Assembly (NCBI GenBank): GCA_037379345.1
Contig: CM074518.1
Span: 18,786,001-18,850,000, forward strand
DNA from: Perna viridis
Lineage: Eukaryota
Length of the DNA stretch: 64,000 nt
Direction: 5' to 3'
Below the pieces are notes generated by a model that saw only the letters and a program-made list of their open reading frames with translations, was not told the DNA's origin and ran no database searches. Made by a program: the position numbers and the translations under genes. Below, one piece after another: positions 25,381 to 64,000 of this stretch (positions are counted from its first letter, which is position 1; each line of letters starts with the position of its first letter).

Positions 25381-28300
25381 TCATATTGACAGGGCATCTA
25401 AAGCTTCTTCGGGTATACCTCGAACATTAGACCCATAGTGCATTTCTATAGTTGTGTGGGCTTGCTCTGGATTGTAAAGTGCAAAAACTGGCCATAAAGG
25501 CTCCGTATTTTCAGAACAAACCAAGTTTACAAAATTAGCAATGACCTGCCTCGATTGCAAGTCAATGATAATCCAATGTCTCCTAGATGTATCTAACAAG
25601 CAACCAAAATCAAGTCTTGAATATGACCGAATGGGTGATGGTATTCGATCAGCGAACGGCATGTGATTCAGCATTTGACCATTGTGCCAACCATGTAGGC
25701 ACACACGTCCGCAGAGGTGACACCCACCGCCACTGACCACCCATGCAAATTGACTTCTATCATTCCGGAATCCTGCATCAATAGCATCATAACGAGCAAG
25801 ACCGAATTCGAACAATACATTCCTCCGTATTAGTTTCAGAATCTTATATTTTACGGTTATTTCCCAATAAAAAAGTCCAGGTCTTCGGAAGGATCTTGTC
25901 CCTAACGTTCCTGGATATAAACGGAGTCGTCTTGTACTATGGTCTCCTGGAGAAGACCCATAAATTGATTTGATAGCTTTTAGACCTATTTCAAGACTAT
26001 CACGTGACACGTCAATTGAAGGATGAGATACAGCAGCATCGAATGCAATGTTTATGCCTGCAAAAAAAAACAATAATAAACTTGAAACTAAACAGGTCAA
26101 AGATATTAGGAGTAAAAACTATGTATGTCAAACCTTCAGTAGTGCCTGACATACTTTTTCCAAATTTTAATTTATATCTGGATTTATGTTAAACGGGACA
26201 AGGAATCGGTAGCCTTTTTTTCTAAATCCTCAATTAATCTTTCATAAAATGGCTCTTTTATAAGATTTCCTATTTTCTAAATTGTACAACGCTAATGCAT
26301 GGATGTAAATATCAAAAATAGAAAAAGAATATCATATTTGATTTCCATTCTAAACCATTGCATGAAGACCACATATACATATTTATATGTAATACCCACC
26401 TTTTGAATCCAGCGTTATTACCACTTTTATTGTAATGGAAAAACTAAGGCATAGTACGGGACATTATGTAGTTTCAAAAGAGTAGATAATCAGTGAAATG
26501 ATTTTATCGACATTCGAAATTGCATGTATACATCAAACATATATCAGCTATCCCGGTAATGTCATGATATGTAGCATACTTAATCTATGCCGTGCATTTA
26601 TTTAATCATTCCGAAGTTATGGTCATATGATGACAGACCAACGACAACACGAATGTTTAACGTAGATTGCAATTTCTCTCTTTTCACTGGTTTTATTCGT
26701 TTCCATGAAAAGGAGTTTTTACTCTTAATTTTTTAAACACGATAGAACACTCTTAACAACTAATGCACAATAGCTGTAATAGGATGTTTATTCTAACAGT
26801 CTTAAAGGACACACTACAATTTATGAATAGAAGTTATCGGTTTTGGATATGTCTAAACCGACACTGTCAGATAATAACTATATCATGACGAATAAAATGT
26901 TATTTATTTACAAGTTATTTGTCTTGGATAGATTGACACATTCAGGAAAAACACATTGATAAAGATTACCACAAAAATAAAATCGTTTCGAGGCAGATTT
27001 AAGATTAAAAGTGGGTAATGCGACAACTGACCTTGACCTTTGACCAATGATATTTGACATTAATAAATATTCAAAATCAATACGTATGTGCAATGTGTAT
27101 TCAAAATGTTTTAAGTGATATTCTGTAATAGTGCTAAGAAATGTGTTACGGAAAGAAAGATCAAAAGAACGCATGGTGGTGAAAATAACAGTTTTTCAAA
27201 CATGAGATAAAAAATGTTTCATCGAATATGGTGACTTTGTAGCATTGAAAACAATATGTTAAAATACGAAAAGTATATACTTAATACGTACAATTAACAT
27301 CATCGTAAAGAAGCCTTCTTTCTGTTATTGTGTGATGTTCTTTGCTCCTATAATCTGATTAACATAAACAAAAATTTATACGGTGTAATCATTTATTGTA
27401 TATGATTTAAAGAGCAGTTTCTTGGTCATAAAATTGAAAAAATCTGAGGATATTCCGAACTTTTTGATGATGTAATATCATGTTATTTTGATTTTTGGTT
27501 CTTGTTTCGTGTAAGAGGACTTCAGTTTATTAAACAATTAGTTTATTTTCCCATTCAATTAAATTGATGATATGTTAATATTTACAGATTATTAAACATT
27601 TCCTCAAATTTTTACTTCGTTATAATGATAGTGAAGTAAATGCCTGGTCATAGGAATTATCAACAACAGAATTTATCAACACTTCCTATCACAACAGTGT
27701 ACGAGATTCACACAAAACTATATATGAAACAGAAAACAAAACAGAAACAGAAACAGATATGCATCATTTTCAGCAACAAAAACAATCCAAAGTATCAAAA
27801 CTAAAGGAAAATTTAAAAACAACAAAGTCCTTAGAAATGGTCAAAACATGAAAACGGAAACAAAGATGGTTCACATAAACAATGTAGCACACAGAATAAA
27901 ATACCATTTTACAAAAAGGTTGATAATAAAAAAGGACAGCACAATCATTCTGTTCATCTTAAATAGCGGTCTTTGTTAGAATCATGCAATTTATGTAATA
28001 TTTGATACACCACTAAAAAGTCTACATATTTTTATTTTTGTTATTAAGTTGCTTTATAGGTCTATATGAAATGTATAATTATTCATTTCAATATGTTTGC
28101 TCTTAGGAAATAATTGTATTTTAGTGTCATTTACAGAGTTGTCTCCCTTAATTTTGATTTCTACAGTACATTCTGTATAATTGTCACCTAAAAACAAGGG
28201 TTATCTAAAAAGTAATATGTTAATTTCGTTTTTCTATAACATTTAAAACAAATATCAAATTTTGCAAGATTGTTATCTGGAGTGATACTAAGTGATATTT

Positions 28301-31300
28301 TATAAAACAAAATATTACGGAAACGAGAGTATTATATTTGATTTACACTTCAAAAGTAAACCCCTTTCATTGATATGTCAATAATCAAAACATTAGAATG
28401 AAACTGTGCCCTATGATCCTACAAAAAGTTGTCATTACGACCAAAACTATATGCTTCATCACTCTATCTAAAAAGGAAAGGTCCATAAAAGTCTCCAGGT
28501 CACGTACATCAGTCGTTTAAGAAATGTTATACGCCTTCAAAAGAACTGATTTGTATCGCCATCCAGAAACATGTTTCACAATCATGAAAATGCTCATATT
28601 TAAACATTTACATACCGGTTGAAACAACTTGAGATCTTGCAGGCGGGATGGGTACATCTTGCTGCACTGATTCATCTGTATAAATGGCAACCATTAAAAG
28701 ACAAAAACATATTTACAAAACATGCTTATTAGGTGTAAATGATTGTTTCACATGAATTCTCTATAGGCTTTACGAAATTTGTCAATAAATGGAATCCAAA
28801 ATAATCTATTAAAGATATAACATTCTGTTACAAAAATAAAAGTTAAAGCTCCTCTGTGACATCAAGAGAAAATGAAACATATATTACTAATTAGCTCAAA
28901 CAATTCAATCAGTGTCACATGATATCTTCTTAATATAGCTACAATGTTTTTCAAATACAAATTCTAAGTTCAAAATGGTTAATTGATTTTTTTTCTCCTG
29001 AAGGCATAGAATGTGGAAGACTTTATGAAAACGGTGTGATAATTAATTCAAGTACGGTGTAAATGTACTTTACTCAATCCTAAAGCATGAGTAGAATATA
29101 TTTGTGTAAATATGGGTAATTCGATTAGCATACAGAAACTTTCTATTTGATTAACATGATGTATTATTTTCAGATTGTTTGAATGAATGTTTTATTCTTT
29201 CATTCTACAGTGGACTAACTTTAGTATTTTTTTAATTGTTTCAGATGAAAAGTTAAAAAGGATACGTTAGCATGAAGTAATATCAGATTTCTCAATATAA
29301 TGACGTCGCGTTAAATATTCCACGCCACTTTTTAACTTCTTTTGAAAACAAAAACAAAACACGTATTATGTCTACCTCCCTTACCTACGTTTAAGTCTTG
29401 ATCAAGCATTTCTATCGTTTTATCGTGCATGCGCTAAATCCATGTACGACATTATTGAAATATGTTGAAGTGATAAAATAAGATTCATTTAACCTTTTAT
29501 TCCATTCACCATTTTCATTACACCAAATTGTCGATAGTTTCACACCATTGAGCGTTTTACTAAAAACTGTACTCCTTCGAAGAAAATTGTTATCGCCTAT
29601 ACACCTTTCATTATTCCAATAAACATTAAAGCAAATCATATAATTCTCTATCAGTCCACATAAACACACCCTAACAATTGTACTAATTTGCTTTCGAAAG
29701 TGAAAACTTATTCTTTGAGGTAAACTTAACTCCTCTAGATCAATAGGGTTTCACTTACCTAAAACGCTCAGTCGAGATGGTGGCTTTGTAAAAGCATACC
29801 CTATGAAAAATTGTACGTACTGTATTTCAACTATACAACATATAGATATTGTCAAAATTAATTTTTCTGTACTCATAAAAATGTCCAATAGTTTATTTCC
29901 CTGTAAATGGTAATTCAAAACACATATCATCGAACTTTAACACTTATTTTTTTCTATATTAGAAACGCGATTACTTTCAGTTTTGTTAACGGTCCCACAA
30001 AGTGACAATTATAATCTAATATTTTCAAAGGCTTTGGTATTTTAGACCGGTATACCATAGCTGAAATAAGAGAACAGAAGCTTGGTATTTATGGTTTACC
30101 AGAATGAAAGACTGAAACAACTTCAGAGAACAGGGAATAAAAGTATATGTTCCTTGTTAAGTGTGTGTCTGTTTTCCCGGGCTACTCCTTATCTTGTCTT
30201 TTGATTTCCTCTTGAATATCGGTTCCCTTTATTTGTCTTTGTATTTTGACTCCTATTTCAACATTACTTCATGACTCCATTATATCAACAAAAGATGACA
30301 ATTTAGTGATACCGTTAATCATTTTTCAATGCATGAACTTCTAAATTTTGAAATTTCTATTTAAATATAATTTACCTCTTGATGTTCTGGACACGTCTCT
30401 ATATAATATATCATCTATAGATTAAAGAAAATTACGTAGGATTTGCCTTTTAATTATTTTAATGTATTTTGTCCAACAAATTCGAAAATTATAACATTGA
30501 TATGGCCCAAAATGTTCTTATTTGGACTCAATAAAAATCTATTGTATATTGAGAAGACGTTTATTGGATTTTGAGTAATAAATGTAAAATGTCCGGTTTT
30601 ATTTAACAATATTGCGCATGCGGGAGTAAATTCAATAGAATGTCATATCGTTTAATATTGTTACTGGATATTATAGACATGGCTTGGAGGAAGAAAATTT
30701 ACCGCAGTACATGTAAAATATTTCAAAGTTGTCGGACCTGATTTGCTTTTAAAAGATGTTTTGCAGATACAACAATATATTTATGAGGATAAAATAACAA
30801 CTACTTTGCAAATATATTGGTGAATGCCTTTTCGTAAAAATAACAATTTTAGTGACAATTTTATGATATTTCAAATTCTTGATACTACGGGTGTTTGCTA
30901 GCAAAATTAAAAAAAAAAAAAGCTATTTTTAGTGAGTGTGTTATACATTAACTTTTACTCATGTCGAATTCAACATTGACTCCAACATTGGTTTTTGAAC
31001 TAAATACCCAAAGAGAAACCATTACCTTACCTGACTTGGCTGATCTAGATGACATTAAACTTAACATCCTTGGGGAATTCATTGTACTCAGTTGTCCTGT
31101 AGGAAAATACAACAAAAATAAATCTAAGATGTAAATGATTGTTTAGCTATTGGTTCGGGGTTTTTATTTATTTCTGTATCAGTGTTATACTTTTGTTTGT
31201 TATGTGTTTAATTTCAATTACTGTCATAATTTTCATTACACTGTTTTTATTTTTTTTAAATAGCTATCATTTTAAAAATCATGATTATTGTCCATTTCCC

Positions 31301-34300
31301 TAACGTTCTGTATATCGCTCACCGACCTGTTGTCATTCTAGACAGGCTTCTTGATGGCAAATTTCCTGAAACATTAAATGATGAAATGTAAACAGAAAAA
31401 AATCTACATGAAAAATGAACCTTAAAATCATTGCCGTTACATGGTAACTACCTTATTATGTGAACACATGAATAATAATAAAGTAAAAAGTATTTCACTG
31501 GTAAATGGAACTAAATACAAATAAAATGCAAACAATACGTGATATAATAAAGAAAGAAGGTATATATAAACACTCGAACATTGACTATATTGTCTTGTTT
31601 TAATACCAATTGTAGAGACGCCATATCGTCTGGAAAGTTCTTAATATTAAACAAATCTTTATAAAAGTCTACAGGTTTACTTTTACATTTAAACGTAAGA
31701 GTACCATGAAACACTAAACCATTAATTTTGATTTACTTGAGTAAAGTCGTTATTTCATAATACTAGTTTGAAGAAAAATAATCTGTATTATTGAAAAATT
31801 TAATACTGTAGTACGCTAATAATCATACCATTACAATTGAGTTGATAAAATGAAATTGAAAAGATACAATTAAAGCAATTATTTAAATAAAATCTCGGGG
31901 GGAAAAGATGGCTATTAACAAACTTTCAGAATGCTAAACAGAAATTAATAGGTACAACACAATGAATGATTACTCTTCACAAAAGCTTTTACTTAGTCAC
32001 ATTTTTGTGCAAGACCTGTTCACAAGTTAACATTATTCTAGCAAAAAAAATCAATAAATTTTATTCCTTTCTTCTGCAATGGATTGCCCAAAACTGTAAT
32101 AATTATTTAAATACAAACATAACGTCATGATCATTTCCAGACGCATTTCGGGTTGTTTGGATGACAAAAATATATGAATATAGATCATGTATCTTATTTA
32201 CTGATATATTTACCTGACAAAAGTGGCGGTGAAGTCTTAAATGAATGTTTTCCTGCATTAAAAAGAAGGGAGAAAATGAGAAAAAATGAAATAAAATAGA
32301 TGCTTTGACACAGTGTGTCGGGAATCCTGATCTTGCACCTAGGCTCTTGTCGGGTTTTGCTCACTTGCATTGCAATGGGTGCCGCTTGCGAAGCAGGACA
32401 TGCTTACCTTTCCGGAGCACTAAATATCACTTACGATTTTATTTTATTTTATTTTATTTTTTTATTTTTTTTTTTTTTTTGGGGGGGGGGGGGTTAGCTC
32501 ATTATGCTTTTGTTTTAGTTTTTGTGCGATGTCTTGTATCCCAGTCTTTAGTTTTTATAAATGTTATTGCATTTAATTCTGTTTGCTTCATTGTGTGTGG
32601 AGATCGACTCTGTTTTCATGTCAAGGCCATTATTAGTCCTTCAGTATCTTTTCAGATATTTATACACGAATTATTAGAAAGAGATCAAATTCTTACAGTA
32701 AACTTAAGAAAACAACAGCATTAAGACTACACATGATAAATATCTTCAATAAAATTTGAATTGCATGTTTGAACATGACACATAAGTCATCTTGATCATG
32801 TTTGTGTCTACAAACTATTTATGTATATGTACATTTTTGGATTTTCATAAAATATTACAGCTAAGGTAATCACTTAAACATACTTACGTTTATTGTAAGA
32901 GTACTGTCCGAGGGCATTAAACTTATACCCCGCTGTGTTTATACATTCCCCGTTTACCAGTATATGCGCAACGTATTTACCAGGCTTTTGAGCTTCGAAT
33001 AAGACTTTGTACGTTCCATCTTTGTCAGTGTAATCTTCGGCATGTGGTCTTATGATATCATTATCAGGGTCTAATATCTCAACAGATATGTCTGCAGTGG
33101 CTGTAAATATGCTTAATTACTTTTGTTACTTTGTATGTATTAATTTGGTTATGTTATGTTCTTTGTTGTGATTTTCTGTTTTCCATGTCTGATCTTTGTC
33201 CCTAGATTACATTCTTTTGATTTTCGCTAGAATCTTGATTCCCTTGATTATTCATTCAATGAATGAATATTTTGAATGAAATAATAGTTCTTCTCATGTC
33301 TTAGAAATACCATTACCTAGTTAATAGATAAATGATGTTTTTCTCTATGTATTTAATCATGCTTAAACTATGAGTAAGGTCTTGTAGAGTAAACATAACG
33401 AAATTATGTGCAAAATCCTTCATTTGTTATCACTTAACAATTTAAGTAGTAGTCTTTGTAAGAATCATGCAAATTCTGTAATATATGTGATACACCCCAA
33501 AAAGGCCATGTATGTTTATTTTGTAGCTAATTAGTTGCTTTATAGGTCTATATAATCAAATGTATAATTATTAATTCCAATCTGTCTGCTCTTAGGAGTT
33601 AATTCTCATTGTACATTCAAAAGTTTCTATTGTATTGTAGTGTCGTTTACAGACTCATCGCTCTTAATGTTGAATTCTACAGTACATTCTATACATTCTA
33701 TAAAGCACGGATTATATGAAAAGACACATATTAATTTCTGTTAGCTATTGCATTTTAAACAAAACATAAAATGTGAAAATATGTAGGCTTTCCAACCATG
33801 AATCACATTTTGCATGATTTTTACCTAGAGTACTACTTAAAACGCTTTTGCCATTGCATTGAAAAATCGGTGTATCATTCAGCAGTTTTGCGCATATATA
33901 TTAATATATACTAGCAGTTGGACTTGCCATAATAAACTGGATTACGATCTTTACTGAACAATCGTATAATTAGTTGGTCTTACCATCATATACAGGAATG
34001 AGATCTTTACTGAACAATCGTATAGTTAAAACTACTTTCTCCTCATCCACTGCTGTATCACTAGGAACTACGACTGTATTTGATATGCAAATTTTTGACG
34101 ACCCAGAAACTCTGTGAGCTGTTGGTACGTATACTTTTGGAGGTTGAAACGTTTGTGAAGATTCCTGTGATTGTTTATCCATACTTGGTGGTACAGATAG
34201 TCTTTCGCTTGATATGCTCAGTTGTCGAACATATGACTAAAATATTAAGTTATCAAAATAATGAAACAGTGTAACAATTACTGCTTGTTCAAAGTAAGTG

Positions 34301-34612
34301 GTGATGAAGATCAGAATGTACAACTGTTATTGTTAATATGTGATTATCATTTCCTTGTTAGTTTACTAATTTTAATATCATGCAAAACAAATTATAAGAT
34401 TACAGTTTTAACAATATATGATGACGTGCAATTGTTGGTATTTCTGATACATTTTCATTTAAATGTTAACTGATGCTTTTGTAACATTTGATTTTTTTTC
34501 ATATCCTTACCTTATACATACAGTCAGACTTTTATCCTTACCTTATACATACAGTCAGACTTTTATCCTTACCTTATACATACAGTCAGACTTTTATCCT
34601 TACCTTATACAT
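25381..34612 (-). CDS. TRIM-derived filamin + B30.2/SPRY-like protein lacking RING/B-box/coiled coil (gene A), ~487 aa
   Basis: Exons (minus): putative MYK 34612-34604; 34236-33984; filamin exon 33100-32888 (ISVEILDPDNDIIRPHAEDYTDKDGTYKVLFEAQKPGKYVAHILVNGECIN); micro-exons 32252-32214, 31365-31327, 31096-31031, 30414-30376, 29800-29759, 29411-29385, 28675-28616; SPRY-like exon 26057-25381 (FDAAVSHPSIDVSRD..GLFYWEITV..FGCLLD..PLWPVFALYN). The chain is open. The alternative start is ATG 34182. The filamin and SPRY exons are clearly homologous to genes B and C. Confidence 0.8.
27964..28290 (+). repeat. Interspersed repeat, copy 1 (copy 2 at 33447-33837)
   Basis: Shared blocks GTCTTTGT.AGAATCATGCAA, GTTGCTTTATAGGTCTATAT, GCTCTTAGGA, TTCTACAGTACATTCT in the same order and orientation. 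Confidence 0.75.
32345..32600 (+). mobile_element. PLE-associated 3' UTR fragment (related subfamily)
   Basis: GAAGCAGGACATGCTTACCTTTCCGGAGCAC is a variant of the GAAAACCAGAGGACGATTACCCTATCGGTGCAC core at 961-993. Confidence 0.5.
33118..33254 (+). mobile_element. PLE 3' UTR fragment
   Basis: CTGTTTTCCATGTCTGATCTTTGTCCCTAGATTACATTCTTTTGATT..CCCTTGATTA matches the consensus. Confidence 0.75.
33447..33837 (+). repeat. Interspersed repeat, copy 2 (copy 1 at 27964-28290)
   Basis: Same shared sequence blocks as copy 1. Confidence 0.75.
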
Positions 34613-34627
34613 ACAGTCAGACTTTTA
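34502..34627. repeat. Perfect 31-bp tandem repeat x4 (TATCCTTACCTTATACATACAGTCAGACTTT)
   Basis: Four identical units starting at 34502, 34533, 34564 and 34595. Confidence 0.97.
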
Positions 34628-35102
34628 CATTGATCTCATTAAATAGACTTTCAATGTAAATATGTGTGCTCAAAGTCAAAATCTTTGAGTAAGGTGACGT
34701 CCGTACTCTGAAAATCGATGAAGAATCATTAAAAATTGTCATAGGGATAAACTAGATTTATCCAACGTTTCTTTAAGTTAGATCGTCTCATTGTACAGAG
34801 TATCTTTTTTGTCATCTAGTCATATAGAAAATTCAATTTAACTGCATGAGCAAATTCTGTTTCGAAAGATTAAACATGTTGTTTGTAAATGATTTGAAAA
34901 GTTTTTGCCTTGCAACTATAACAAACACTTGTCCGTCGAAAGTCTCGTGGTAGACCGTGACTGTTCGACTCAAGCTAGCCTTGAGTCAAACAAATGTTCG
35001 GTGGCGTGTCGATCCCTTGTTTTCTTTTTTTAAATGTGTAAAAATGTAATGCAAGTGTTTTTTTTATATATTCATAAATGTTTTATATAAAAATAAATGA
35101 TT

Positions 35103-35173
35103 GTGTCTGGTCTTTGTCCCTGGATTACATTCTTTTGATTACCGCTATAACCTAGGTTCCCTTGATTATTCTT
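35103..35173 (+). mobile_element. PLE 3' terminal fragment
   Basis: TGTCTGGTCTTTGTCCCTGGATTACATTCTTTTGATTACCGCTATAAC is identical to 1103-1150. Confidence 0.8.
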
Positions 35174-36287
35174 CCTTATACATTTTGTATAAAATTTTAA
35201 TAGAAATCATTAACATCAAGACTCAATTACTAATTATACATTCGATTACCTATATTTTCTTCAAATTAAAGTAATAAAGTTTGTTATCCAACATCATCTA
35301 TTGTGAAAATAAGGATTTTTTTGTTTTTGAATTAACATTAGGTTTGATCTACCTTAGTTATAACATCTGATAAATTAAGCGTATACGAATATTGTGTAAA
35401 CTAAACGTCGTTGAAAGCGGACACGCATAAAAATGCATTACTCATCATCGTCGAAAACAAAATCGGGTACATCTTTGGCATTGGCGGTGTACCTATATCT
35501 GAGTCAGTATTTTTTTTCACGTTTTCAAAAATGTTTTCCTACCTAGCAATCGTTGTATTAATCTCCATTTGTAAGGTTTCTTAAAAGAACAACAAGAAAC
35601 TTTAAACCTTATAGTTATAGACAATAACATTTGTCACTTACACTCTTAACGTCTTTTGGATTAAGAACCCATGGTTATACAGTTAACGATTCTTTTCATT
35701 TATTGTATAGCAAAGTAATGGTAACATGGAATATTACCCACAAAATCAAGAAACGCTTGAATTACGTCAGGTTATTATAATGTTAAAAGCCCATGTATTA
35801 GGAACATTGAGATGTCAGGAAAAGGTTGAAACCAAGTGTTGGCAAACATTTATTTAGCAATAGTCTCGTTGTAAGTATATTTCTTATTATACATATTTAT
35901 TTTTTTAGTAACCGTTTTCATAACATGGTGTTAATTTTTTAATTGTATTTTGCAAAAAAAAAATACCTCAAGCAAACGGTTATCGTGTTCGTTATCAGAT
36001 ATCATATTATTCGGGTATCGATATAGCTATTACAAGATCTAGTGTTTGAATTTATTCAGGTAGTATTGAAATTCTTGAGATGAATACAACGATTTAAAGA
36101 TGTTTTGAAAAACCTCAAATAATGACTTAAGATTAAAGTACGTCTTTACTTCATAATTTTATATGCAACTTTAGGAAATGTATCTAGTATAAAGTGTCTT
36201 ACATGTATGTGTAAGTAAATTTCATCAACTGTAGTGAGAAATCTTTAAAATTTCGCTTTTCAGAGTTTTCAAGAGTATAATTCCAAG

Positions 36288-39200
36288 ATGTCAACAGCGA
36301 CGTACCACCCGGTGATGACACAACCTCTCCGTGTACCAAGCAAGTCCTCGATTCGTCCACAGATTGAGCACGTACGGCAAAAATTTTTAGAATGTTACGT
36401 TTGCAACGAAGAATTTGATGACGTTGAACATATTCCAAGAGTTCTTCCATGTCTTCATTGCGTATGTGAAGGATGTCTCGAGACAATGAAAACACGTGAC
36501 TCTGTCGTCTGCCCAGAGTGTAACGAATCACACACCATTCCTAATGGTAACATAAAAACCTTCCACAAGGACGGATGTCGGGGATATCTAACAAAATATC
36601 TAAAGGTGCAGACAGATGAAGCAGCTATTGCATGTGATGAATGCACCAATAAAAGACGCGGAACGCATCGCTGTAAAGAATGCTCCCAATTTCTTTGTAA
36701 CGATTGTACAGATGCACACTTGAAGACAAAAGTTACAAAGAAGCACGAGATTACCAATGTAAACGACCTCAAAGAATGCACGATTGAAGAATTTCAGTCC
36801 GTCCAACAATGTACAGTAAAAGGTCATGAAGGCCAGGGCTTTACGTATTACTGTGTTTCTAATTCCTGTGATAAGCCTGTGTGTGCCCTTTGTGCAGTTG
36901 AGTTTCACCCTGATTCCAAAAATCACAAATTACGAACACTGACAGACGTTTATGCAGAAACCAAAAGAACTATTGATAGTCTGGTATCGGAAGTGAAGCA
37001 CAAACAGTTAACGGCAGACAGCGCGATAAATAACGTTGATGATATTATAACAAATCTAGACAGTGTTAAAGAAAGATTGACTGAAGATATCGATATGGCT
37101 TTCGAAAAATGTCAGAAAATGCTCGATGAGAGGAAAGAAGAAGTGATGAATGAGCTGTTAACCGCTGTCAGTATGAAGAAAAAACGACTTCAAGATCAAC
37201 TGAGTACTTTAAACTTCCATAAAGGAAACCTTGATGATTCCAATGAATTTGCAATTTGTTCTTATACATATGCATCACCTACAGAATTCATGAATGTTAA
37301 ACATCAAATTATTGATCGATTGCAAGACCTGAATTCCCGCCAACTTGATACGATTCCACATGATAATGCTGATGTACAGGTGACGCTATCATTGCTCATG
37401 CTAAAACAAAATAGAAAATAGCATTGCAACATTATGCAATTATAGCAATTGAGCTGGAACGATCTTTATTAGAAAAGGATTACACGTACTTTGATCATTG
37501 CGTTGATTACGATACAAAAGATGCAATTTACTTTTGCATTTTAGCTTAAATTGTACGTCTAAAGGCCCAAACAAACAGAAATGACACAAAAAATCATGTT
37601 TATATAAAACGTACAAATAAAATTACCAAGTGAATTTACACTTGTAGTTAGATCATTGACATAGAGTAAGTAATAAACGAATTTTGCAACCATTTAATAC
37701 ACTAACAAGTATTTCTCTCTCTTTCATTGCAGTTCAATAAGAAAAACATGAATGAAGACTTCAAGCTCTTTACGGAAAGAGTCGGAAAAATATCGACGTC
37801 CTCTCCACATTCGTTGAACGCCAGTGTGACTGTGAATGACATACCGGTGGATGTTGAAGACGTTCCCATTACTATCCATGTAAACGGTGTCGAGAACGCT
37901 GCTTCAGCAGAAGGTTTTAAGTGATATTATATTTGTTAAGAGTAGTATATTCGTATACCTAACTAAATAACATTAAACTTTCATTCAACCATTTCCAACA
38001 ATCATTTAGTTACGTTAAAAAATAATACGATCAAGATCATGCTTTTAACGGCTTGGATATCAAGTAATATTTACCTGCCACCTGTTACTTTTCGTAAATT
38101 TACTTACAGAATTGCGATGATTTTCAATTATGCTGTACATTTACACGACTTAATTTTGCAGGTAGCGTTGATATGAAAGTAGAAATCAGAGATCCAGATG
38201 GAAGAATACACCGACCAACAGTGGAAGACTTTACCAAGAAACAAGGTTGCTACAAAGTCTACTTCTTAACTTCAAAGCTTGGAAGACACAAGGCTACTAT
38301 ATTGGTAAATGGTGAAAGTATCAATGCAGAGGGGTATAAATTTCACGTTTTACCACATGGAACCGGTAGACAGTCGGCTACTCACAGTAAGTTTTATTAG
38401 AAGCTCTTTGTCAAACATCTTGTTCCTATTGTTATGATACATTCATATAACACATTTTCAATTCACTTAGTCATTTGACTATGGTTTAGGTTTGCCGTAG
38501 CTTTTTGTTTGACAAATTTTGAGAATGAATAATTAGCATACATATCGTCAAACAATAGAAATCCGCAAACAAACCACAGCCTAGAACAATAAGACAAAGT
38601 GGTCATACACAACACAAACGTATTTTTAGAAAGTACATACAGAAACGACTGTCTATGAAAAATGTGAGCCGTTTATTTTATTTTTATTTTTTTTATAACA
38701 CTTCGGAACATCTTAGTGTCGTGTGAAGAATTGTCAGCATAGGTAAACATTAACATGTAGCCAATCACCATCTAGAAAAAAAATTGGTAAATGGCCGCTA
38801 TTAAAGAAAAACGAACTAGTTTTATTTCCAAACTTTTGTACATACATCATTGCTATTTTCAAATATACGAAAATTTTCTCTACGTTGACGGGGAAAATTA
38901 CTACATTAATTTTATTAATTGCTATGAAATTATTCCTGTATAAATAAGAAACCAAGTGAGTGTATGCATGATGTTTCATATCACTTATTCTACCAGGAAT
39001 TCCAGGATTAATACCTATATTGCTTTTAAGGGCCAACACGAGTTCATTCGCCACCTAATGTGACACACGGGATTGCAATATCTCCGACTAATTCAGGTAG
39101 AATAAATAATATATTTACATAATTACAATCAAGGTAAAAACAATTGAGGTTTTACATGCCACTGTATCAATCATATAATGGAAAATGTTCTTCTAATCCT

Positions 39201-40606
39201 ACCATTGAAATTCAATTTTAAAACTGATGTTTTGATAAAAACACCAGACAAATTCTATATATATTGCGATGCATTACTGATTGGAATATATGAATACCAT
39301 ATGCACACTGTGCTTAGATATTAGCCTGAATTAAAATATAAGCAATTTGCGTTGACCAATAATAACATTTCAATCCTTTGGTTTAAACATCATTTTCTTA
39401 TAAATGATTCACGGCTAGGTTTTACCAAAGAAATACAAACAAAATATTAGATATACGTGCATTGTAGATGTAACAATCGTTGGACGAATAACTCCGAGAG
39501 ATATTATGCATGGTGATGTCAACTGTAAGTAAACTCCATTGTGTTGAAATGTTCCTCTTCCTGTATGAGAGTTTGGTACTTATTATTATGTCATTCCATA
39601 AGTGCACAACGTTATCAAGGCTAATTTGTAAAGACGATTTTAAACTTTTATAGTTGTTGTCATATTTATTTGCAACTATGTTATTTTTAAAGAAAATAGT
39701 TCTTTCAAAATCGATTGTGTGAACAGTTTTAAAAATGATATACAAAAATGAAGCGTGGATAAAAGTAATATTGATTATTATGTGGGCAAGAGCTATATAA
39801 CATTTGAATATTTTGTATTGGGACAGCATCATACATAATAATTTTGAATTACAAATCTAGATTCAAAATTGCATTTCTAAAAAAAGTAAACATATCTGCA
39901 GATATTTTGAATTTCAATAGGTGTTGACATGTCATTTGATGCGTCTATTGCGCATGCCAGTGTCGACATATCTCCGGATGGCAAGCTTATGAAGATGAGA
40001 CCCCTGCGTCAACGCAACGATTTAAGATTCCGGGAATCAGAGGCCAGAGGTCGAAGGTTAAAGAACTACAAAGGAACGATTGCTACGAAGTCGTTTAACA
40101 AGGCCGGTCTGATATACTGGGAATGTGTGGTTCAGTACAAAGTTCTGCGTCTTATACGTCAGACCATGCTATTTGAAATGGGCTTGGCCAGACATGAGTA
40201 TGTTGACAAACACTACACTGTTGATGGATATCCCTACGCATGGGCAATAAGTGCCAGGGGATGTCATATTTGCGGCAAAGTCTGTCTACAAACATGGCAC
40301 AATGGTCAGCTAATGACCCATAACCCACTGTCCAATCGCACTGTGACGCCACCAAATATTGTCGTAAGACTTCATTACGGATTCCTCCTAGATGCAACTA
40401 AACGCCATTGGATAATTGTAGATCTGAAAACAAAGAAGGTCATTTTTCACTTTAAGAATTTGGTTATGTCAGAAATGTCCGACCCTCTGTTCCCTGTATT
40501 TGCCATTTACAATCCAGAACAGGTACAGGTTTCTATGGAACTACTCTCTGGTATGAACATAGCCAGTGTGCCCGAGGAAGCATTGGACGCTTTGGTTCTA
40601 ACATAA
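36288..40606 (+). CDS. TRIM E3 ubiquitin ligase-like protein: RING-Bbox1-Bbox2-coiled coil-filamin-B30.2/SPRY-like (gene B), ~768 aa
   Basis: Exons 36288-37379, 37733-37913, 38162-38386, 39031-39096, 39468-39524, 39921-40606 (2307 nt, phases consistent). C3HC4 RING CYVC..PCLHCVCEGC..CPEC; B-box1 CDEC..CKEC..LCNDCTDAH; B-box2 CTVKGH..C..CDKPVCALC..H..H; helical coiled coil; filamin VEIRDPDG..YKVYFLTSKLGRHKATILVNG; SPRY-like FDASIAH..GLIYWECVV..YGFLLD..PLFPVF. Confidence 0.9.
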
Positions 40607-45698: not shown

Positions 45699-48600
45699 AT
45701 GAGTACGGCAACTTACCATTCTGTAATGACAGAAACTGTCGGAGCACTGAGTCAGACTTCGGTAAACCAGCAAACAGAACCTCTCCGAGCTGAAAGCCAG
45801 GCTTCAGCTAACCAACAAACGGAACCTGTCCGAGAACGAAAGCCGCAGACAGAAACTTTGCGGATATCAAGTAAGACATCGATCAACCAGCAACATGATC
45901 TGGTCCAACAAAAGTTTTTAGAATGTTACGTCTGTAAAGAAAACTTTGACGACTATGACCATATTCCGCGAATTCTTCCATGTCTTCACTGCGTTTGTGA
46001 AGAATGTCTCGAGAAAATAAAAACGCAAGATTCTGTCGATTGTCAAGAGTGCAATGAATCACACTCTATACCAAATGGTAACATAAATTTTTTTCAAAAA
46101 GACGGCTGTCGGGAACATCTCATCAAGTATCTTAATGTTCAGACCGACGATTCAGCAATTACATGTGACGAATGTACTAAAAGAAAAAAAGGAACTCATC
46201 GTTGTAAAGAGTGCTCCCAGTTTCTCTGTAAAGACTGTACAGATGCACACAGGAGGACAAAGGTTACCAAGAAGCACGAAATCACCACTGTTAAAGATCT
46301 AAAAGAATGCGCTGTTGAGGAATTTTTGTCCGTGCAATGCTGTACAGTAGCAGGACACGAAGATCACGCATACGCATACTATTGTATCTCCGACTCGTGT
46401 AACAAGCCAGTTTGCCCTCTCTGTGCTGTAGAATTTCACCCCGAATCTAAAAATCACAAGTTACAGAAACTTACAGATGCTTATACTGAAACTAAAAGAA
46501 ATGTTGATTATCTAGTGTCGCAACTAAAACATAAACAATTAACAGCAGACGATACACTAACAATCGTCGAGAATATCATATCGAAACTTGACATTGTACA
46601 GGAGAAGTTGACTGAAGATATTGATATCGCCTTCGACAGATGCCAAAAGAAGATAGACAAACGTAGAGAAGAAATCAAGAATGAATTGCTAGATGTCATT
46701 AGTATGAAGAAGAAGCGACTTCAGGATCAAATGAATGTTTTGAACGTCCTTAAAAGAAATCTGGAAGATTCAAGCGAATATGTTGCTTGTTCGTCTACTT
46801 ATGCATCACCTTCAGAGTTCATGAATCTTAAGGACCAAATTATTGAGAGATTGGAGGACCTTAATTATCAACAGGTTGATACAAATCCACATGACAATGC
46901 TGATGTGGAGGTAACAAGAGTTTAAACAATACATACTGAATATTACATGCAAAAATGACCAGTATCATATGCCAACTCGTCCTGAGACTCCTCATATCAC
47001 CCCAATTGCCACCGACCAGAGTGATGATATAGATCGAGAATTGATTTAGCATGTGATACAGATTTTGCCTTGTTCATTATATCAACTATTTCAACTATAC
47101 TTCAATTGTGTTCCGAGAAAGAGTGCCATATAGAGTATGCTATATTGGTATAAGGGTGTGATATAGGATATGCTATATAGTTATAAGGGTGTGATTAAGG
47201 GTAAAAATATAGGGTTTAAACAAGGATCGCTTCTCATGCATATACAAAAAAACTGTTATATATGATATCGGTTGAAAATATAGGTTTGCAGAAATTTGAA
47301 CTCATAAAATTTCGAAAAAATACTCGAAGGAAGAAATAATTTATTTTTATTTTATCTTGGAGATTTAATATTCAAATTATATTTCTGTCACCCACTAATA
47401 TTGGAATCGAGTTTTAACACATAAACTATGCAGATAAGTAAGAGCATGTATAATACAAGATATAAATATAAATGACTAAAATAATTGAATTTGAACTCCG
47501 TATTTTATTCGTCAAAACTTTCCATTCTTTGTTTCACTCAAGCTAGATATATCTCATTTCAGCTGCAACGAAACAACATGGACGAAGACTTCGAACATTT
47601 TTCGGATAATATTGGAAAGATTCGGGCGTCATCACCAAATGTTCCAACCAATCTAGAGAATGTTCCAATGGCTATTCATCTTTATAATATTGAGAACGGT
47701 CAAAAAGAAGGTATTCAAGCCCTATGATTAGCTTCACTTAAACCTTTAACTGTGTTACTTATATGAAGGAGAACAATATTATTCATTCATTTTATTGCTC
47801 TAATTTACACTTAATTAAGTACATGAGTGTGTTTATTAAATTAGCATTTTGATAGATCTTAACAGAAACCCAACGGAAACTTTGTTTGAACATATTTTAT
47901 TGTTCATCCATCCTTGTTTATGAACAATAAAATATGTTTAAACTAACACACACACAGTCAACACTTAAAGACTATATATTTTACAGGTGACACTGGCATT
48001 CAAGTAGAAATACAAGATCAAGACGGAAAGGTGCACCGTCCAGCAGTTGAGGCCTACGACAACAAACAGGAGTGTTATAAAACCTACTTCAAGTCTCCAA
48101 ACCTAGGGGGTCAGAAGGCCACTATCTTGGTCAATAGTGAAAGCATAAATGCAGAGGGATATCGATTCGACGTTAAATCGCGCGGTAGCAGTAAACATTC
48201 GGTTATTTATAGTAGGTATCCTCCACATGACGCCTTTCTTTGGTTTTGTACTTTCTACAGTGTCCGTCATAGTTATTGTATTTGATAAGATCCAAGACTC
48301 GGTTCGAGACTTAGTATTAAGGACAATATGTTTACATACATCAGTGCTAAGAAACTGTTTATATGAGCTAATTCATTAATTAAGTTGTACTTTGGGAAAA
48401 GAAATTCTATCTGCATTAGATGTACAAAAAACCCTGCTTTTTGAGTGTAATTAAATGGCCATAAAAGATTCAAGGGCTTGTTGTTAAGATGTCACTTCTT
48501 ACAAAGACTCATCGAACACTTCAACAGTGGAGAAGTACATGTGTTGTCCTTAGAAAACATCAAGAACTTGTGTTATTGGTCAACCTGATTCCATACATGT

Positions 48601-50201
48601 ATTTCATTACATTTTTCAAAAGAATCGTATAATTCAGTTGAAAATAATGCCATTTCTAAAACCCTAGTATTAAATCAAGCGCTTAGTGTGTTGTGCTTCT
48701 GTACCTATCGTCAGAGCGATGGTGCCATCATTGCATAGAAAACTATACCTTGAATTCGTTTTTTTTCGAAAATGAGATATATGTATTCAACCAGAATGGT
48801 AGCTGCTATCACGGCGGTCTCTGTAACGCTAATTCGACACTATGTGTTATACCTTTAATGATTTATAAGATTGTGTTTGATACAATTTCTTGTAGATGTA
48901 ACAATTGCCGGAACACAAGCTCCAAGGGACATCACGCATGGCGATGTTAACTGTAAGTTCACATTGTCTTACACAATGTATGTGGTTTTATTTTTGGCGC
49001 GCCCATTCATATATAATGTGGGTTCACATGGGCATTGTAGGAAAGTTAAACATGTTTGAGTCCTTGGTACAGTCATTGTTCCAGGGAAAGGGTTCTGGGG
49101 ATTGGACCACTACTCCTTGTTGAGAAAAAAAGTTTGCTTAAAATCAGGGCAAAAATTGGCAAACAATAAGCTGGAACCCTGGTAGTTCAACCTAGATTTC
49201 TTGTAATGATTCAAACATATGATAAAAGATTATGACATTGCATTGTTCCATATCAGTCCTTGTATCAACTCCCCGCCCATATCAACTCTCGAGCAGATTT
49301 CTTTCGGCTTGACATGCATTGAAGTATCGTGTTGATACACGGGGAGATAAGGAAAATCAATAATTTAATCTATAAATATCAACTGATTTCAGTTCAAATC
49401 GCATGCGTTCTATATGTTATCGCATGGGCTTTGGCCAAAAAAGCATGACATGAACAGTGTCACAAAATTATCTAGTCAGTTGTTTTAACCGCCATCTTCC
49501 TATGCCTCTTTACAGGTGTCGACATTTCATTTGATGCTTCTATTGCGCATGCCTTTATAGAGATATCTCCGGATGGTAAAATGATGAAGATGAAGCCCAA
49601 TCGCCAAGGCAATGATTTTAGCGTCCGGGAACTGGACCCTAGAGTCCGAACATTCAAGAACTACAAAGGAACAATTGCTACAAAGTCGTTTAACAAGACT
49701 GGACTAATCTACTGGGAAGCAGTAGTTCAGTACAGAATTTTGTCGTTTATTCGCCAGACAATGTTATTTGAAATGGGGTTGGCTAGGTTTGAGTATATCG
49801 ACAAACATCATACTGTAGATAGATACCCTTACGCGTGGGCAATAAGTGCCAGAGGCTGTGATAATTGTGGAAAAGTTTGTCTTCAGACATGGCATAATAG
49901 TCAACTTATGACCCATTACCCACTTTCAAAACGCATTGCAACTTCTCCAAGTTCAGTAGTCCGACAGCATTTTGGATTCCTTCTAGATACGACAAAACGC
50001 CATTGGATAATCGTAGATTTGAAGACAAAGAAGGTCATTTTTCATTTTAAGAATTTGGTGATGTCCGATATGGCCGACCCTCTGTATCCTGTCTTTGCGA
50101 TTTACAATCCAGAGCTAGTGCAGGTTTCTATAAATTTACTCTCTGGCATGAACATAGTCAGCGTTCCTCAGGAAGCCTTAGATGCATTAGTTACTACATG
50201 A
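45699..50201 (+). CDS. TRIM E3 ubiquitin ligase-like protein, tandem paralogue of gene B (gene C), ~775 aa
   Basis: Exons 45699-46910, 47563-47710, 47987-48211, 48896-48952, 49516-50201 (2328 nt, phases consistent). Intact RING and two B-boxes. The filamin (225 nt), micro-exon (57 nt) and SPRY (686 nt) exons have the same lengths as in gene B. Confidence 0.9.
47889..47938. repeat. Perfect inverted repeat, 19-bp arms, 12-nt loop, in intron 2 of gene C
   Basis: AACATATTTTATTGTTCAT-CCATCCTTGTTT-ATGAACAATAAAATATGTT. Confidence 0.95.
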
Positions 50202-61395: not shown

Positions 61396-62454
<1,059 letters not shown>

Positions 62455-64000
62455 TGAAGGTTATTAAATACACTGTATCAGATAATACAAAAATGGAAAT
62501 GTAGGCACTGGTTTATATTGTAAGAAACTTGCTGAAATATGAAATGTTCAACTGAACATCAGAGATAAAAAAAGACACATTTTAGAAATAATGAATTTCA
62601 ACTTGTAAGCTCATTTGTGTGAAGCACTGAGATCAGCAGGAGAAAATGTGAACTAAAAGTAAAGATACTATGGAAATACATGTAATAACTTTTTCAACTA
62701 AATGTTCTTAAGACTTGTTCCTGTACACTGTACACATAGTGCCAAGGAATTACAGTCAATGTAAACAGAAGAGCATGACTTCAATGTTTTTTTTTAAGGA
62801 AAAATTTCTCATTAACTGCTTTTTAAAAGAAACAAAAATCAAAGATCCATTGTCATTAAAAGTGAACTTTTCTTATAATTTTGTATATTAGCATTTATTT
62901 AAAGACTTGCTTGACATTGTTTAGGCATTTTATAAACTGAAGCACATTTGTACAGTGTACAGTAAAATGTCACAATTTTTCATATACAGTACATGTAATA
63001 ATGTTTCACTCTAGCATGATATTTGGATCATTTTTTTATTTTTATTTTTTTTTGGGTGGGTGGGTGGGGGGGGGCACCAGAAATCTAACATTTTGAGAAA
63101 TTTGTCCCTAGACTGTTAAGGCAAGTTTTTTTACTTCAGTCATCCATTTGATATTTTCCATTTATATGACATACATGTAAATTACTACCCTGAAACTATA
63201 GTGCACATCCACGTATTTCTTGTAATGTGAACTTTTTTCTTAAAAGGTTCATTTTCTTGAAAGCAAAGTCAAACAGTCTACAAAATGCATTGGATACATG
63301 TATTTTTTTTTTTTCAACGCAGTCGGTATAGTTCCACTTTTTACCCTTTGACTTTAAAGACGCTCTTCCATAGAAACGCACATCACCTGATAAAAATTTG
63401 GTTTCCTGATTGGCGAAATACTGAAAACTTAGTGGCATTGGGGAAAAAACTGTATCAGAAGTTGAAATTGCCTGCCATGTCTTATTTCCTGAAGAAAATT
63501 ATGGGTAAAAAGAACAGATTTTGCTGCGATGAATATCTTTTTTTAAAGATAGTACTTGTTATTTCCTTCCATGGTTTTTCGTTTTTAAAATAGGATAGAC
63601 CATTAGCTTTTTTGTGCATGCTATTCCAGAAATTTACACTAGTGTACATGTACATGGATTTGCTTTGTCTCCTCTTGTCTTGTTTATATTACATGCAATT
63701 TATTTAAATGCATAGTGAATAGTGCCAGAGCTGTCATAAATATTATGTCTTGAAGCCAGTATTAAGCTTTGTCAATTTGCCTTTGTGTGCAATATTAACT
63801 ATGCCTTTCAGGTTCTGAACACTGAATAATTAAAATTGAATGTGCATATTGTTATATAGGGGAGGCAAGTTGTTATGGTACAAATGTATGTTTTCCAATT
63901 TAAAAACAAATAATTTTACTGGTCTATAAAATCATTCATTCTTCATGTCAACAGATGAATTTAAATTAATAAAGAATTGATTATTTTCAAGGGCCATTTA

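What the first reader, a model, noticed from the sequence alone, without database searches (positions are those of the whole stretch)
25381..40606. 'Headless' filamin-SPRY paralogue head-to-head with a full TRIM ligase: possible decoy/partner pair
Seen: gene A (minus) has homologues of the linker, filamin and SPRY exons of gene B. No RING/B-box/coiled-coil exon exists on the minus strand anywhere upstream in the window (up to 64 kb), yet its exon chain is fully open with intact splice sites. Its 5' end lies ~1.7 kb from the ATG of gene B, in divergent orientation. Inference: a catalytically inert substrate-binding module co-regulated with an active E3 could be a decoy, competitor or sensor, analogous in layout to head-to-head paired immune receptors.
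Basis: partly seen in the sequence, partly recalled or inferred. Interest (0 to 1): 0.8.

Follow-up and report, generated by a model that had tools for sequence, protein, structure and literature searches.

The report
Conserved RING-less filamin-SPRY gene beside TRIM
A mussel gene that keeps only the target-binding half (filamin plus PRY/SPRY) of its neighbouring TRIM ubiquitin ligase is really transcribed, spliced, under purifying selection and kept head-to-head with that ligase in Mytilus too, but whether it acts as a decoy for the ligase remains untested.

Summary
Gene A (minus strand, 25381-34717) is an 11-exon gene. Spliced transcript contigs from four independent studies start at about 34717 and join 34604 to 34236 and 33984 to 33100. 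Exon 1 carries three in-frame stops before its ATG, so no RING/B-box/coiled-coil can be translated onto it. No such exon lies on that strand within about 2 Mb.

The last exon gives no Pfam hit but folds (pLDDT 91.5) as a PRY/SPRY domain.

Orthologues are headless too: a 480-aa 'uncharacterized protein' of Mytilus edulis, and 452/438-aa transcript-derived proteins of another species. In M. edulis and M. coruscus the same head-to-head pairing with the TRIM is kept.

Gene A forms its own clade, sister to B/C. It is the derived copy, with pN 0.04-0.18 against saturated synonymous sites.

So it is an old, functional, non-catalytic paralogue born by inverted partial duplication. The decoy/partner reading is neither shown nor excluded. 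A's putative binding loops differ from B's and are conserved within the A clade, which argues against simple mimicry.

This is a new variant of a known kind (truncated TRIM relatives) and of moderate interest. Other first-stage notes on this window already covered parts of the locus.

The parts
34604..34717 (-). Gene A exon 1. It holds the 5'UTR with in-frame stops at 34678, 34672 and 34627, a 4-codon uORF, and the first ATG of the long ORF at 34612-34610 (3 codons), followed by a GTAAGG donor.
   Evidence: Contig pieces 34604-34717 in runs X1, X2 and X7, and 34604-34709 in X8, each joined to 34236. Frames and stops.
34502..34627 (.). Perfect 31-bp tandem repeat, 4.1 copies. The first copy (in transcript sense) is the end of exon 1 with the ATG and donor. 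The three further copies lie in intron 1.
   Evidence: Transcripts use the first copy only.
33984..34236 (-). Gene A exon 2 (253 nt, phase 0 to phase 1). It encodes the unique N-terminal tail, a second ATG at 34182 with A at -3 and G at +4, and the first strands of the filamin-type Ig domain.
   Evidence: Contig pieces in four runs. Homology to P0085 residues 33-78.
32888..33100 (-). Gene A exon 3: the second half of the filamin/ABP280 repeat.
   Evidence: Contig pieces in four runs. Pfam PF00630 E 1.4e-5, 26.3 bits (cut-off 26.9). 57% aa identity to gene B's filamin exon.
32214..32252 (-). Micro-exon m1 (39 nt, phase 1-1).
   Evidence: Splice sites. Depth in that bin is somewhat above what 39 nt would give. 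Matches the P0085/P0077 linker.
31327..31365 (-). Micro-exon m2 (39 nt, phase 1-1).
   Evidence: Depth equals contig depth x 39/200 in X1, X7 and X8..
31031..31096 (-). Micro-exon m3 (66 nt, phase 1-1).
   Evidence: Depth fits 65-66 nt in X7 and X8. tblastn of P0085 and P0077.
30376..30414 (-). Micro-exon m4 (39 nt, phase 1-1). Predicted.
   Evidence: Splice sites and open frame. Residue-level match to the P0085 linker. Outside the stretch laid with reads.
29759..29800 (-). Micro-exon m5 (42 nt, phase 1-1). Predicted. Its counterpart is a cassette exon in another species.
   Evidence: P0077 and P0079 differ by exactly this 14-residue unit.
28616..28675 (-). Micro-exon m6 (60 nt, phase 1-1). 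Predicted.
   Evidence: Match to the P0085 linker.
27292..27354 (-). Micro-exon m7 (63 nt, phase 1-1). Predicted. Homologous to gene B's small exon at 39467-39526.
   Evidence: BLASTP of P0085 244-256 against P0086 527-539.
25381..26057 (-). Gene A last coding exon: the PRY/SPRY (B30.2) domain plus the stop codon. The 3'UTR continues to about 25000.
   Evidence: AF2 pLDDT 91.5. Foldseek finds TRIM25, TRIM65 and BTN3A1 PRY/SPRY at E about 1e-10. 14 likely RNA runs from four studies hold 61-94% of its words.
34718..35800 (.). Region of about 1.08 kb between the 5' ends of genes A and B: a candidate bidirectional promoter. It contains a dispersed ~70-nt repeat at 35104-35173.
   Evidence: No detectable sequence conservation with the Mytilus intergenic regions.
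35801..35870 (+). Gene B non-coding first exon, spliced (GT..AG) to 36264.
   Evidence: Joint 35870>36264 in all four runs.
36264..37379 (+). [quoted passage not shown]
   Evidence: Pfam RING E 2e-5 and B-box E 1.5e-4. 78% aa identity to M. coruscus 'TRIM2_3' residues 1-364. Donor site.
37733..38386 (+). Gene B exons 37733-37913 (or -37920) and 38162 (or 38166)-38386: the linker and filamin repeat.
39467..40606 (+). Gene B small linker exon (39467-39526) and its PRY/SPRY exon (about 39920-40606).
45849..50198 (+). Gene C, a tandem full-length paralogue of B (68% aa in the RBCC exon, 78% in PRY/SPRY). It has no headless partner.

Best explanation
Gene A is a genuine, expressed, long-conserved protein-coding gene.

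Origin (inferred from the tree and layout). In an ancestor of these mussels the 3' part of a B-type TRIM gene, from its intron 1 onward, was duplicated in inverted orientation. The RBCC exon was replaced by a short new first exon in the same intron phase.

Product (shown, with one inference). The protein has about 480-499 residues:
- a disordered N-terminal tail;
- one filamin-type Ig domain;
- a disordered Ser/Arg/Leu-rich linker of about 115 residues, built from seven phase-1 micro-exons;
- a PRY/SPRY (B30.2) domain.
It has no RING, so it cannot recruit an E2. It has no B-box or coiled-coil, so it cannot join a TRIM dimer in the canonical way (inference from family knowledge).

Mechanism (inferred). 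It most likely works as a stand-alone, non-catalytic binding or adaptor protein. Its PRY/SPRY surface changed after the duplication and has been kept since, so it probably has its own ligand or its own variant of a ligand. The head-to-head position about 1.1 kb from TRIM B may give shared transcriptional control. A functional link to B (competition for related targets, or handing over targets) is possible but not shown.
For: Transcription and splicing:
- Contigs of 1.8-1.95 kb from three runs (X1, X7, X8) and a 726-nt contig from X2 (four runs, four studies) show exon 1 joined to exon 2 and exon 2 to exon 3. All four contigs end within about 14 nt of 34717.
- Exon 1 has in-frame stops at 34678, 34672 and 34627.
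- The assembly holds a single copy of the last exon, so these contigs do not come from a retrocopy.

Gene model: complete GT-AG chain and a 499-codon ORF.

Domains:
- PRY/SPRY by fold.
- Filamin: Pfam near threshold.
- Model of the M. edulis orthologue: residues 36-135 all-beta with block-mean pLDDT mostly 82-91; residues 136-249 below 50; residues 250-480 PRY/SPRY.

Headless orthologues:
- P0085, 480 aa, Mytilus edulis.
- P0077 and P0079, from a transcript contig with an in-frame stop directly before the ATG.

Synteny: the head-to-head pair is kept in M. edulis (1,165 bp between the two genes) and in M. coruscus.

Tree: the A clade has 100/100 support and is sister to the B/C clade (98/92). 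A full-length TRIM (P0004) sits outside both. At 17 clade-diagnostic sites that outgroup agrees with B at 11 and with A at 2.

Selection: for A against its orthologues pN is 0.044, 0.18 and 0.20, with pS about 0.8-0.86 (saturated). For the filamin exon dN/dS is 0.075.

Intron 1 is phase 0 in both A and B.
Against: - No protein-level evidence exists, and no ligand is known.
- The runs are only guessed to be RNA, although GT-AG joints without a retrocopy make DNA origin very unlikely.
- Micro-exons m4-m7 lie outside the stretch laid with reads and rest on homology.
- Which ATG is used (34612, weak context; 34182, strong context) is unknown.
- Long conservation of the pair could reflect simple linkage of two close genes rather than shared regulation.
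- A's distinct binding loops do not exclude competition for a shared multi-site target.
Confidence: 0.75

Rival explanations
1. Decoy, competitor or partner of TRIM B. A and B are driven by one bidirectional promoter. A's ligase-free filamin-PRY/SPRY module either competes with B (and C) for the same target or binds B and tunes it.
For: The head-to-head layout, with about 1.08 kb between the 5' ends, is conserved in two Mytilus species. Both transcripts are present in all four runs laid, with a contig-depth ratio B/A of 1.5-2.2 (weak, because the runs were picked for holding A). A keeps both target-binding domains of B.
Against: A lacks the coiled-coil through which TRIMs pair. A and B share only 45-50% identity in PRY/SPRY. 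The differences cluster in loop regions and are fixed within each clade. The A stem branch is long (0.49 against 0.12), which points to a change of function.
Confidence: 0.2
2. Transcribed relic: a partial duplicate that is expressed from the neighbour's promoter but has no protein function.
For: It originated as a partial duplication. Perfect 31-bp and 56-bp tandem duplications at two of its donor sites show a locus in flux.
Against: The 499-codon ORF is intact across 11 exons. Non-synonymous divergence is 4-20% against saturated synonymous sites in three species comparisons. Headless orthologues with intact ORFs exist in other genera.
Confidence: 0.03
3. Mis-modelled TRIM: the true gene A has an RBCC exon elsewhere (far upstream, trans-spliced, or lost in a mis-assembly).
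For: Apart from gene A, each locus of this C-terminal domain family in the genome has an RBCC exon nearby. One RBCC exon on contig 2 is followed by two such C-terminal exons.
Against: Four contigs end at the same place. There are three in-frame stops in exon 1. The window has no N. No minus-strand RBCC exon lies within about 2 Mb. NCBI's M. edulis annotation and a transcript of another species independently give the same headless model.
Confidence: 0.02

Closest known systems
TRIM (RBCC) E3 ligases with a filamin repeat, as named by annotators: 'TRIM2_3' of Mytilus coruscus (P0086), the orthologue of the neighbouring gene B
   Same: A's filamin repeat and PRY/SPRY exon are homologous to those of the TRIM (32% and 53% identity between the Mytilus pair). 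The exon phases are the same.
   Different: A has no RING, B-box or coiled-coil. It has five extra linker micro-exons and a new first exon. Vertebrate TRIM2/3 carry NHL repeats after the filamin repeat (own knowledge), whereas this family carries PRY/SPRY.
'Incomplete' TRIM-like genes of vertebrates (Sardiello et al. 2008, PMC2533329)
   Same: Members of the wider TRIM family that have lost part of the tripartite motif.
   Different: That paper's TRIM-like set keeps the B-box together with either RING or coiled-coil. Gene A keeps none of the three.
RBCC-poor relatives of TRIMs that keep the C-terminal module, such as FSD1/FSD1L (FN3-SPRY) and TRIM16L (recalled from own knowledge; a TRIM16L PRY-SPRY structure, 6sjh, is among the fold hits)
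   Same: A TRIM-derived target-binding module encoded as a gene of its own, without ligase activity.
   Different: Different domain set (filamin Ig rather than FN3/COS). No coiled-coil at all. Lineage-restricted to mussels. Kept head-to-head with the parent-type TRIM. No sequence orthology was tested.
Head-to-head paired plant NLR immune receptors with an integrated decoy
   Same: Divergent orientation of two related genes with a short shared upstream region.
   Different: There the pair is known to interact physically and one member carries a decoy domain. Here neither interaction nor decoy behaviour nor any immune role has been tested.

Membership tests
TRIM / RBCC E3 ligase (gene A) | RING finger | tested here: not met
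   No RING in any gene A exon. There is no RBCC match on the minus strand. The transcript starts at about 34717 and has in-frame stops.
TRIM / RBCC E3 ligase (gene A) | B-box zinc finger(s) | tested here: not met
   As for RING: the Pfam scans of the headless orthologues P0077 and P0079 hit only Filamin.
TRIM / RBCC E3 ligase (gene A) | Coiled-coil following the B-box | tested here: not met
   Homology to the TRIM starts at TRIM residue 391, after the coiled-coil. The N-terminal 35 residues of the orthologue are modelled as disordered.
TRIM / RBCC E3 ligase (gene B) | [quoted passage not shown] | tested here: met
   RING E 2e-5 and B-box E 1.5e-4, each just under Pfam's own cut-off. The B-box and RING (zf-C3HC4) hits pass Pfam's cut-offs in the homologue P0004. 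78% identical to the annotated M. coruscus TRIM. Ligase activity itself was not tested.
PRY/SPRY (B30.2) domain | Bent beta-sandwich fold of PRY plus SPRY | tested here: met
   AF2 model with pLDDT 91.5 and pTM 0.88. Top Foldseek hits are the PRY/SPRY domains of TRIM25, TRIM65, BTN3A1, TRIM21 and pyrin, at probability 1.00 and E down to 8e-11.
PRY/SPRY (B30.2) domain | Sequence match to Pfam PF00622 / PF13765 | tested here: not met
   No hit at E <= 0.1 for the A, B or C exons. More distant homologues show only weak SPRY/PRY hits over the aligned region.
Filamin/ABP280 repeat (PF00630) | Sequence match and Ig-like all-beta fold | tested here: inconclusive
   Gene A exon 3 scores 26.3 bits against a cut-off of 26.9; P0077 scores 25.2 bits. 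The homologous domain passes the cut-off in P0004 and P0015. The orthologue model has eight strands at residues 36-135 with high pLDDT. No separate fold search of this domain was run.
Paired head-to-head receptor/decoy system | Divergent orientation conserved across species | tested here: met
   Window, M. edulis L018 and M. coruscus L019.
Paired head-to-head receptor/decoy system | Co-regulation, and physical or competitive interaction between the two products | not tested
   Only four runs could be laid, all chosen for holding A. No complex prediction was sent, because the report does not claim binding.

The most novel reading that the evidence does not exclude
A TRIM ligase and its ligase-free paralogue form a conserved, bidirectionally transcribed functional unit in mussels. 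The headless filamin-PRY/SPRY protein gates, competes with or senses for the E3, and its alternatively spliced micro-exon linker tunes that relation. This would be an animal counterpart of paired sensor/executor genes.
Probability: 0.15. Interest if true: 0.75.

Novelty: new variant of a known kind. Interest (0 to 1): 0.45.

Why it matters
Truncated TRIM relatives are usually dismissed as debris of fast-evolving clusters. This one has lost the whole tripartite motif, yet it is transcribed, strongly constrained, and has stayed head-to-head with a parent-type ligase across mussel genera. That gives a clean natural case for asking what a TRIM target-binding module does without its ligase, and whether gene order reflects shared control. 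It also corrects annotation: the Mytilus orthologue is only an 'uncharacterized protein'. It also documents an RBCC-filamin-PRY/SPRY domain combination that, from my own knowledge, has no counterpart among human TRIM classes.

Tried and rejected
- Pfam on the C-terminal exons gave nothing, so the domain had to be identified by fold.
- The word-based protein search with the exon alone found only two fragments, because of its length window. The headless full-length orthologues came from cluster members and a second search with P0077.
- blastn of the A-B intergenic region against the two Mytilus intergenic regions found no conserved block.
- Rfam on 32800-36300 found nothing.
- Paper searches found no work on this family in mussels and none naming the run or assembly accessions.
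- The outgroup genome locus (L014) has no A-like exon within 10 kb on either side of its TRIM. This is compatible with the state before the duplication, but 10 kb is too short to prove it.
- The many 'joints' between 33140-33213 and 35104-35133 are artefacts of a dispersed repeat present at both places, not splicing.
- An early impression that A evolves more slowly than B (90% against 65% in one species) was dropped. The B-like fragment P0003 groups with gene C rather than with B, and against Mytilus the two genes diverge at similar rates.
- Contig depth was not used as expression evidence.
- Complex prediction was not sent, because the report does not claim that A and B bind.
- The joined spliced model of gene A was never sent to a search or folding tool. 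Searches used single exons by reference or natural proteins returned by the tools. The joined ORF was only counted locally.
Full report
**What is in the window.** The window has no N and is 32.6% G+C. It is G000:C8:18786001-18850000 of a 723-Mb assembly.

tblastn with gene B's exons shows three related genes:
- Gene B, plus strand, ATG at 36288, last exon ending at 40606.
- Gene C, plus strand, 45849-50198. It is 68% identical to B in the first exon and 78% in the last.
- Gene A, minus strand, with only a filamin exon (33089-32910, 57% to B) and a C-terminal exon (26049-25384, 45% to B).

The first exons of B and C carry RING and B-box matches. In the window, and in the assembly out to about 2.1 Mb on this chromosome, no RING/B-box/coiled-coil exon lies on gene A's strand. 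The C-terminal domain family has ten loci in the genome. Apart from gene A, each has an RBCC exon nearby; one RBCC exon on contig 2 is followed by two C-terminal exons.

**Transcripts.**
- Fourteen runs with transcriptome-sized contig sets, from four studies, hold 61-94% of the words of gene A's last exon and 3'UTR.
- Contigs of four such runs, one per study, were laid on 31001-37000.
- In each run one contig covers 34604-34717 (34604-34709 in X8), then 33984-34236, then 32887-33100, and runs on downstream. The contigs are 1955, 1906 and 1842 nt in three runs and 726 nt in the fourth.
- All four end within about 14 nt of 34717.
- The last base of the third piece is ambiguous with the first base of the next exon. 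The true donor is the GTAAGT at 32887, so exon 3 is 33100-32888.
- The contig depths in the bins at 31201-31400 and 31001-31200 equal what 39-nt and 65-66-nt exons would give. These match micro-exons at 31365-31327 and 31096-31031. A 39-nt exon at 32252-32214 fits less exactly.
- The runs are only guessed to be RNA. However, GT-AG joints, together with a single genomic copy of the exon, leave RNA as the only reasonable source.
- Gene B has a non-coding first exon at 35801-35870, spliced to 36264. The two 5' ends are therefore about 1.08 kb apart, and the two ATGs 1,676 bp apart.

**Gene model.**
- Eleven exons with GT-AG borders give a 499-codon ORF.
- Exon 1 has in-frame stops at 34678, 34672 and 34627 and a 4-codon uORF. 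The ATG at 34612 follows, then two more codons and the donor.
- A second ATG at 34182 has a strong context. It corresponds to the start of the orthologous ORF in another species.
- Whatever lies upstream, nothing can be translated onto the filamin frame.
- Introns 1 of A and B are both phase 0, as expected if A's new exon 1 replaced the RBCC exon.
- Micro-exons m4-m7 lie outside the stretch I could lay and rest on splice sites and homology.
- I did not send the joined model to any search or fold tool. Searches were exon by exon by reference, or used natural proteins returned by the tools.

**Domains.**
- Pfam finds nothing in the C-terminal exons of A, B or C.
- An AlphaFold model of A's exon with 26 relatives has pLDDT 91.5. 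Its best PDB matches are PRY/SPRY domains of TRIM25, TRIM65, BTN3A1, TRIM21 and pyrin.
- The filamin match is just under Pfam's cut-off in A (26.3 against 26.9 bits) and above it in relatives.
- A model of the Mytilus edulis orthologue shows a disordered tail (residues 1-35), an eight-strand all-beta domain (36-135), a disordered linker (136-249) and PRY/SPRY (250-480).
- In gene A the linker is 116 residues and rich in Ser, Arg and Leu.

**Relatives.**
- An exhaustive HMMER search finds only 68 representative proteins with this C-terminal domain. Most of the long ones are RBCC-filamin-PRY/SPRY proteins of 600-890 residues.
- Gene A's exon has close counterparts at 89% (P0001) and 69% (P0002) identity on short genomic contigs. 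Both keep the same phase-1 acceptor.
- The P0002 cluster also holds P0077 (452 aa) and P0079 (438 aa). P0077 comes from a 1.7-kb transcript contig with an in-frame stop directly before its ATG. The two differ by exactly one 14-residue micro-exon.
- A search with P0077 finds P0085, a 480-aa 'uncharacterized protein [Mytilus edulis]', and P0086, 'TRIM2_3 [Mytilus coruscus]', which is gene B's orthologue.
- P0085 has the same seven linker micro-exons, unit for unit.
- Compared with the TRIM, homology starts at TRIM residue 391, after the coiled-coil. The TRIM has only two linker exons, which correspond to m1 and m7.
- From the closeness to Mytilus, the genome size and at least 15 large contigs, I infer that the window comes from a mytilid mussel. 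I did not establish the species.

**Synteny.** In M. edulis the headless gene and the 764-aa TRIM lie head-to-head, 1,165 bp apart. In M. coruscus the TRIM again has a filamin-bearing gene on the opposite strand directly upstream. In the genome that carries the outgroup TRIM P0004, no A-like exon lies within 10 kb on either side.

**Evolution.**
- In a maximum-likelihood tree of the C-terminal domain, the four A-type sequences form a clade (100/100). It is sister to the B/C clade, with the split supported at 98/92, and P0004 lies outside both.
- The A stem is four times longer than the B/C stem (0.49 against 0.12).
- At 17 sites fixed differently in the two clades, the outgroup agrees with B at 11 and with A at 2. 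A is therefore the derived copy.
- Non-synonymous divergence of A from its orthologues is 0.044, 0.18 and 0.20, while synonymous sites are saturated (pS about 0.8-0.86). The filamin exon gives dN/dS 0.075.
- B shows similar constraint.
- The clade-specific differences cluster in the low-confidence PRY segment and in loops between strands, and they are conserved within the A clade.

**Reading.**
- Shown: gene A is a real, spliced, conserved gene without any part of the tripartite motif, and it is kept head-to-head with a full TRIM.
- Inferred: it arose by inverted partial duplication, changed its binding surface, and acts as a non-catalytic binding or adaptor protein.
Orientation and conservation are compatible with it. 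The lack of a coiled-coil and the divergent, clade-conserved loops speak against simple mimicry. I could not test co-expression (one reads call, four runs chosen for holding A) or binding.
- The pseudogene and mis-model alternatives are effectively excluded.

**Comparison with known kinds.** Gene A fails all three defining features of a TRIM. It also fails the B-box-based definition of 'TRIM-like' genes in Sardiello et al. 2008. It resembles, in principle only, RBCC-poor TRIM relatives that keep a C-terminal module (FSD1 and TRIM16L; own knowledge). The full-text searches found no paper on this family in mussels. Earlier first-stage notes on the same window cover the micro-exons, the 31-bp repeat and the three-gene cluster.

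Noticed in passing
window 34502-34627: Perfect 31-bp tandem repeat (4.1 copies, 100% match). Each unit holds the ATG, two more codons and a GTAAGG donor. Transcripts use only the first unit, and the other three sit in intron 1 as unused potential donors. Contig depth in 34401-34600 is not fully explained and may come from multi-placement.
   Followed up: partly
window 33916-34028: 56-bp tandem duplication (84% match) that copies the end of exon 2 with its donor. The second copy has GC where the used donor has GT.
   Followed up: partly
window 35104-35173 and 33186-33253: A dispersed ~70-nt repeat with at least 764 candidate copies in the genome and very high summed contig depth in the four runs laid. 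It causes false 'joints' between the two places. A MITE-like unit with 38-nt inverted ends lies at 33441-33841.
   Followed up: partly
P0077 against P0079 (locus L016): In another species the orthologue has two transcript forms that differ by exactly one 14-residue (42-nt) phase-1 micro-exon. This is the counterpart of window 29800-29759, so the linker is alternatively spliced.
   Followed up: partly
window 45849-50198: Gene C, a tandem full-length copy of B, has no headless partner upstream. On the tree it groups with a fragment from another species (P0003), so the B/C duplication predates that split.
   Followed up: partly
G000:C2:32188179-32203228: One RBCC exon followed by two C-terminal PRY/SPRY exons on the same strand. 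A 1258-aa relative (P0005) has two such domains. This probably matches the double-B30.2 TRIM noted earlier in this scan.
   Followed up: no
window 10549-11151 (-), 61405-62457 (+), 2609-3076 (+): Unrelated coding pieces: an ionotropic glutamate receptor exon, a protein kinase exon and a DUF1759 retroelement fragment.
   Followed up: no
P0071 against window 25384-26100: An ENA contig, probably of the same species, carries a near-identical last exon with three residue changes within about ten residues of the PRY segment and an indel in the intron. This may be allelic variation.
   Followed up: no
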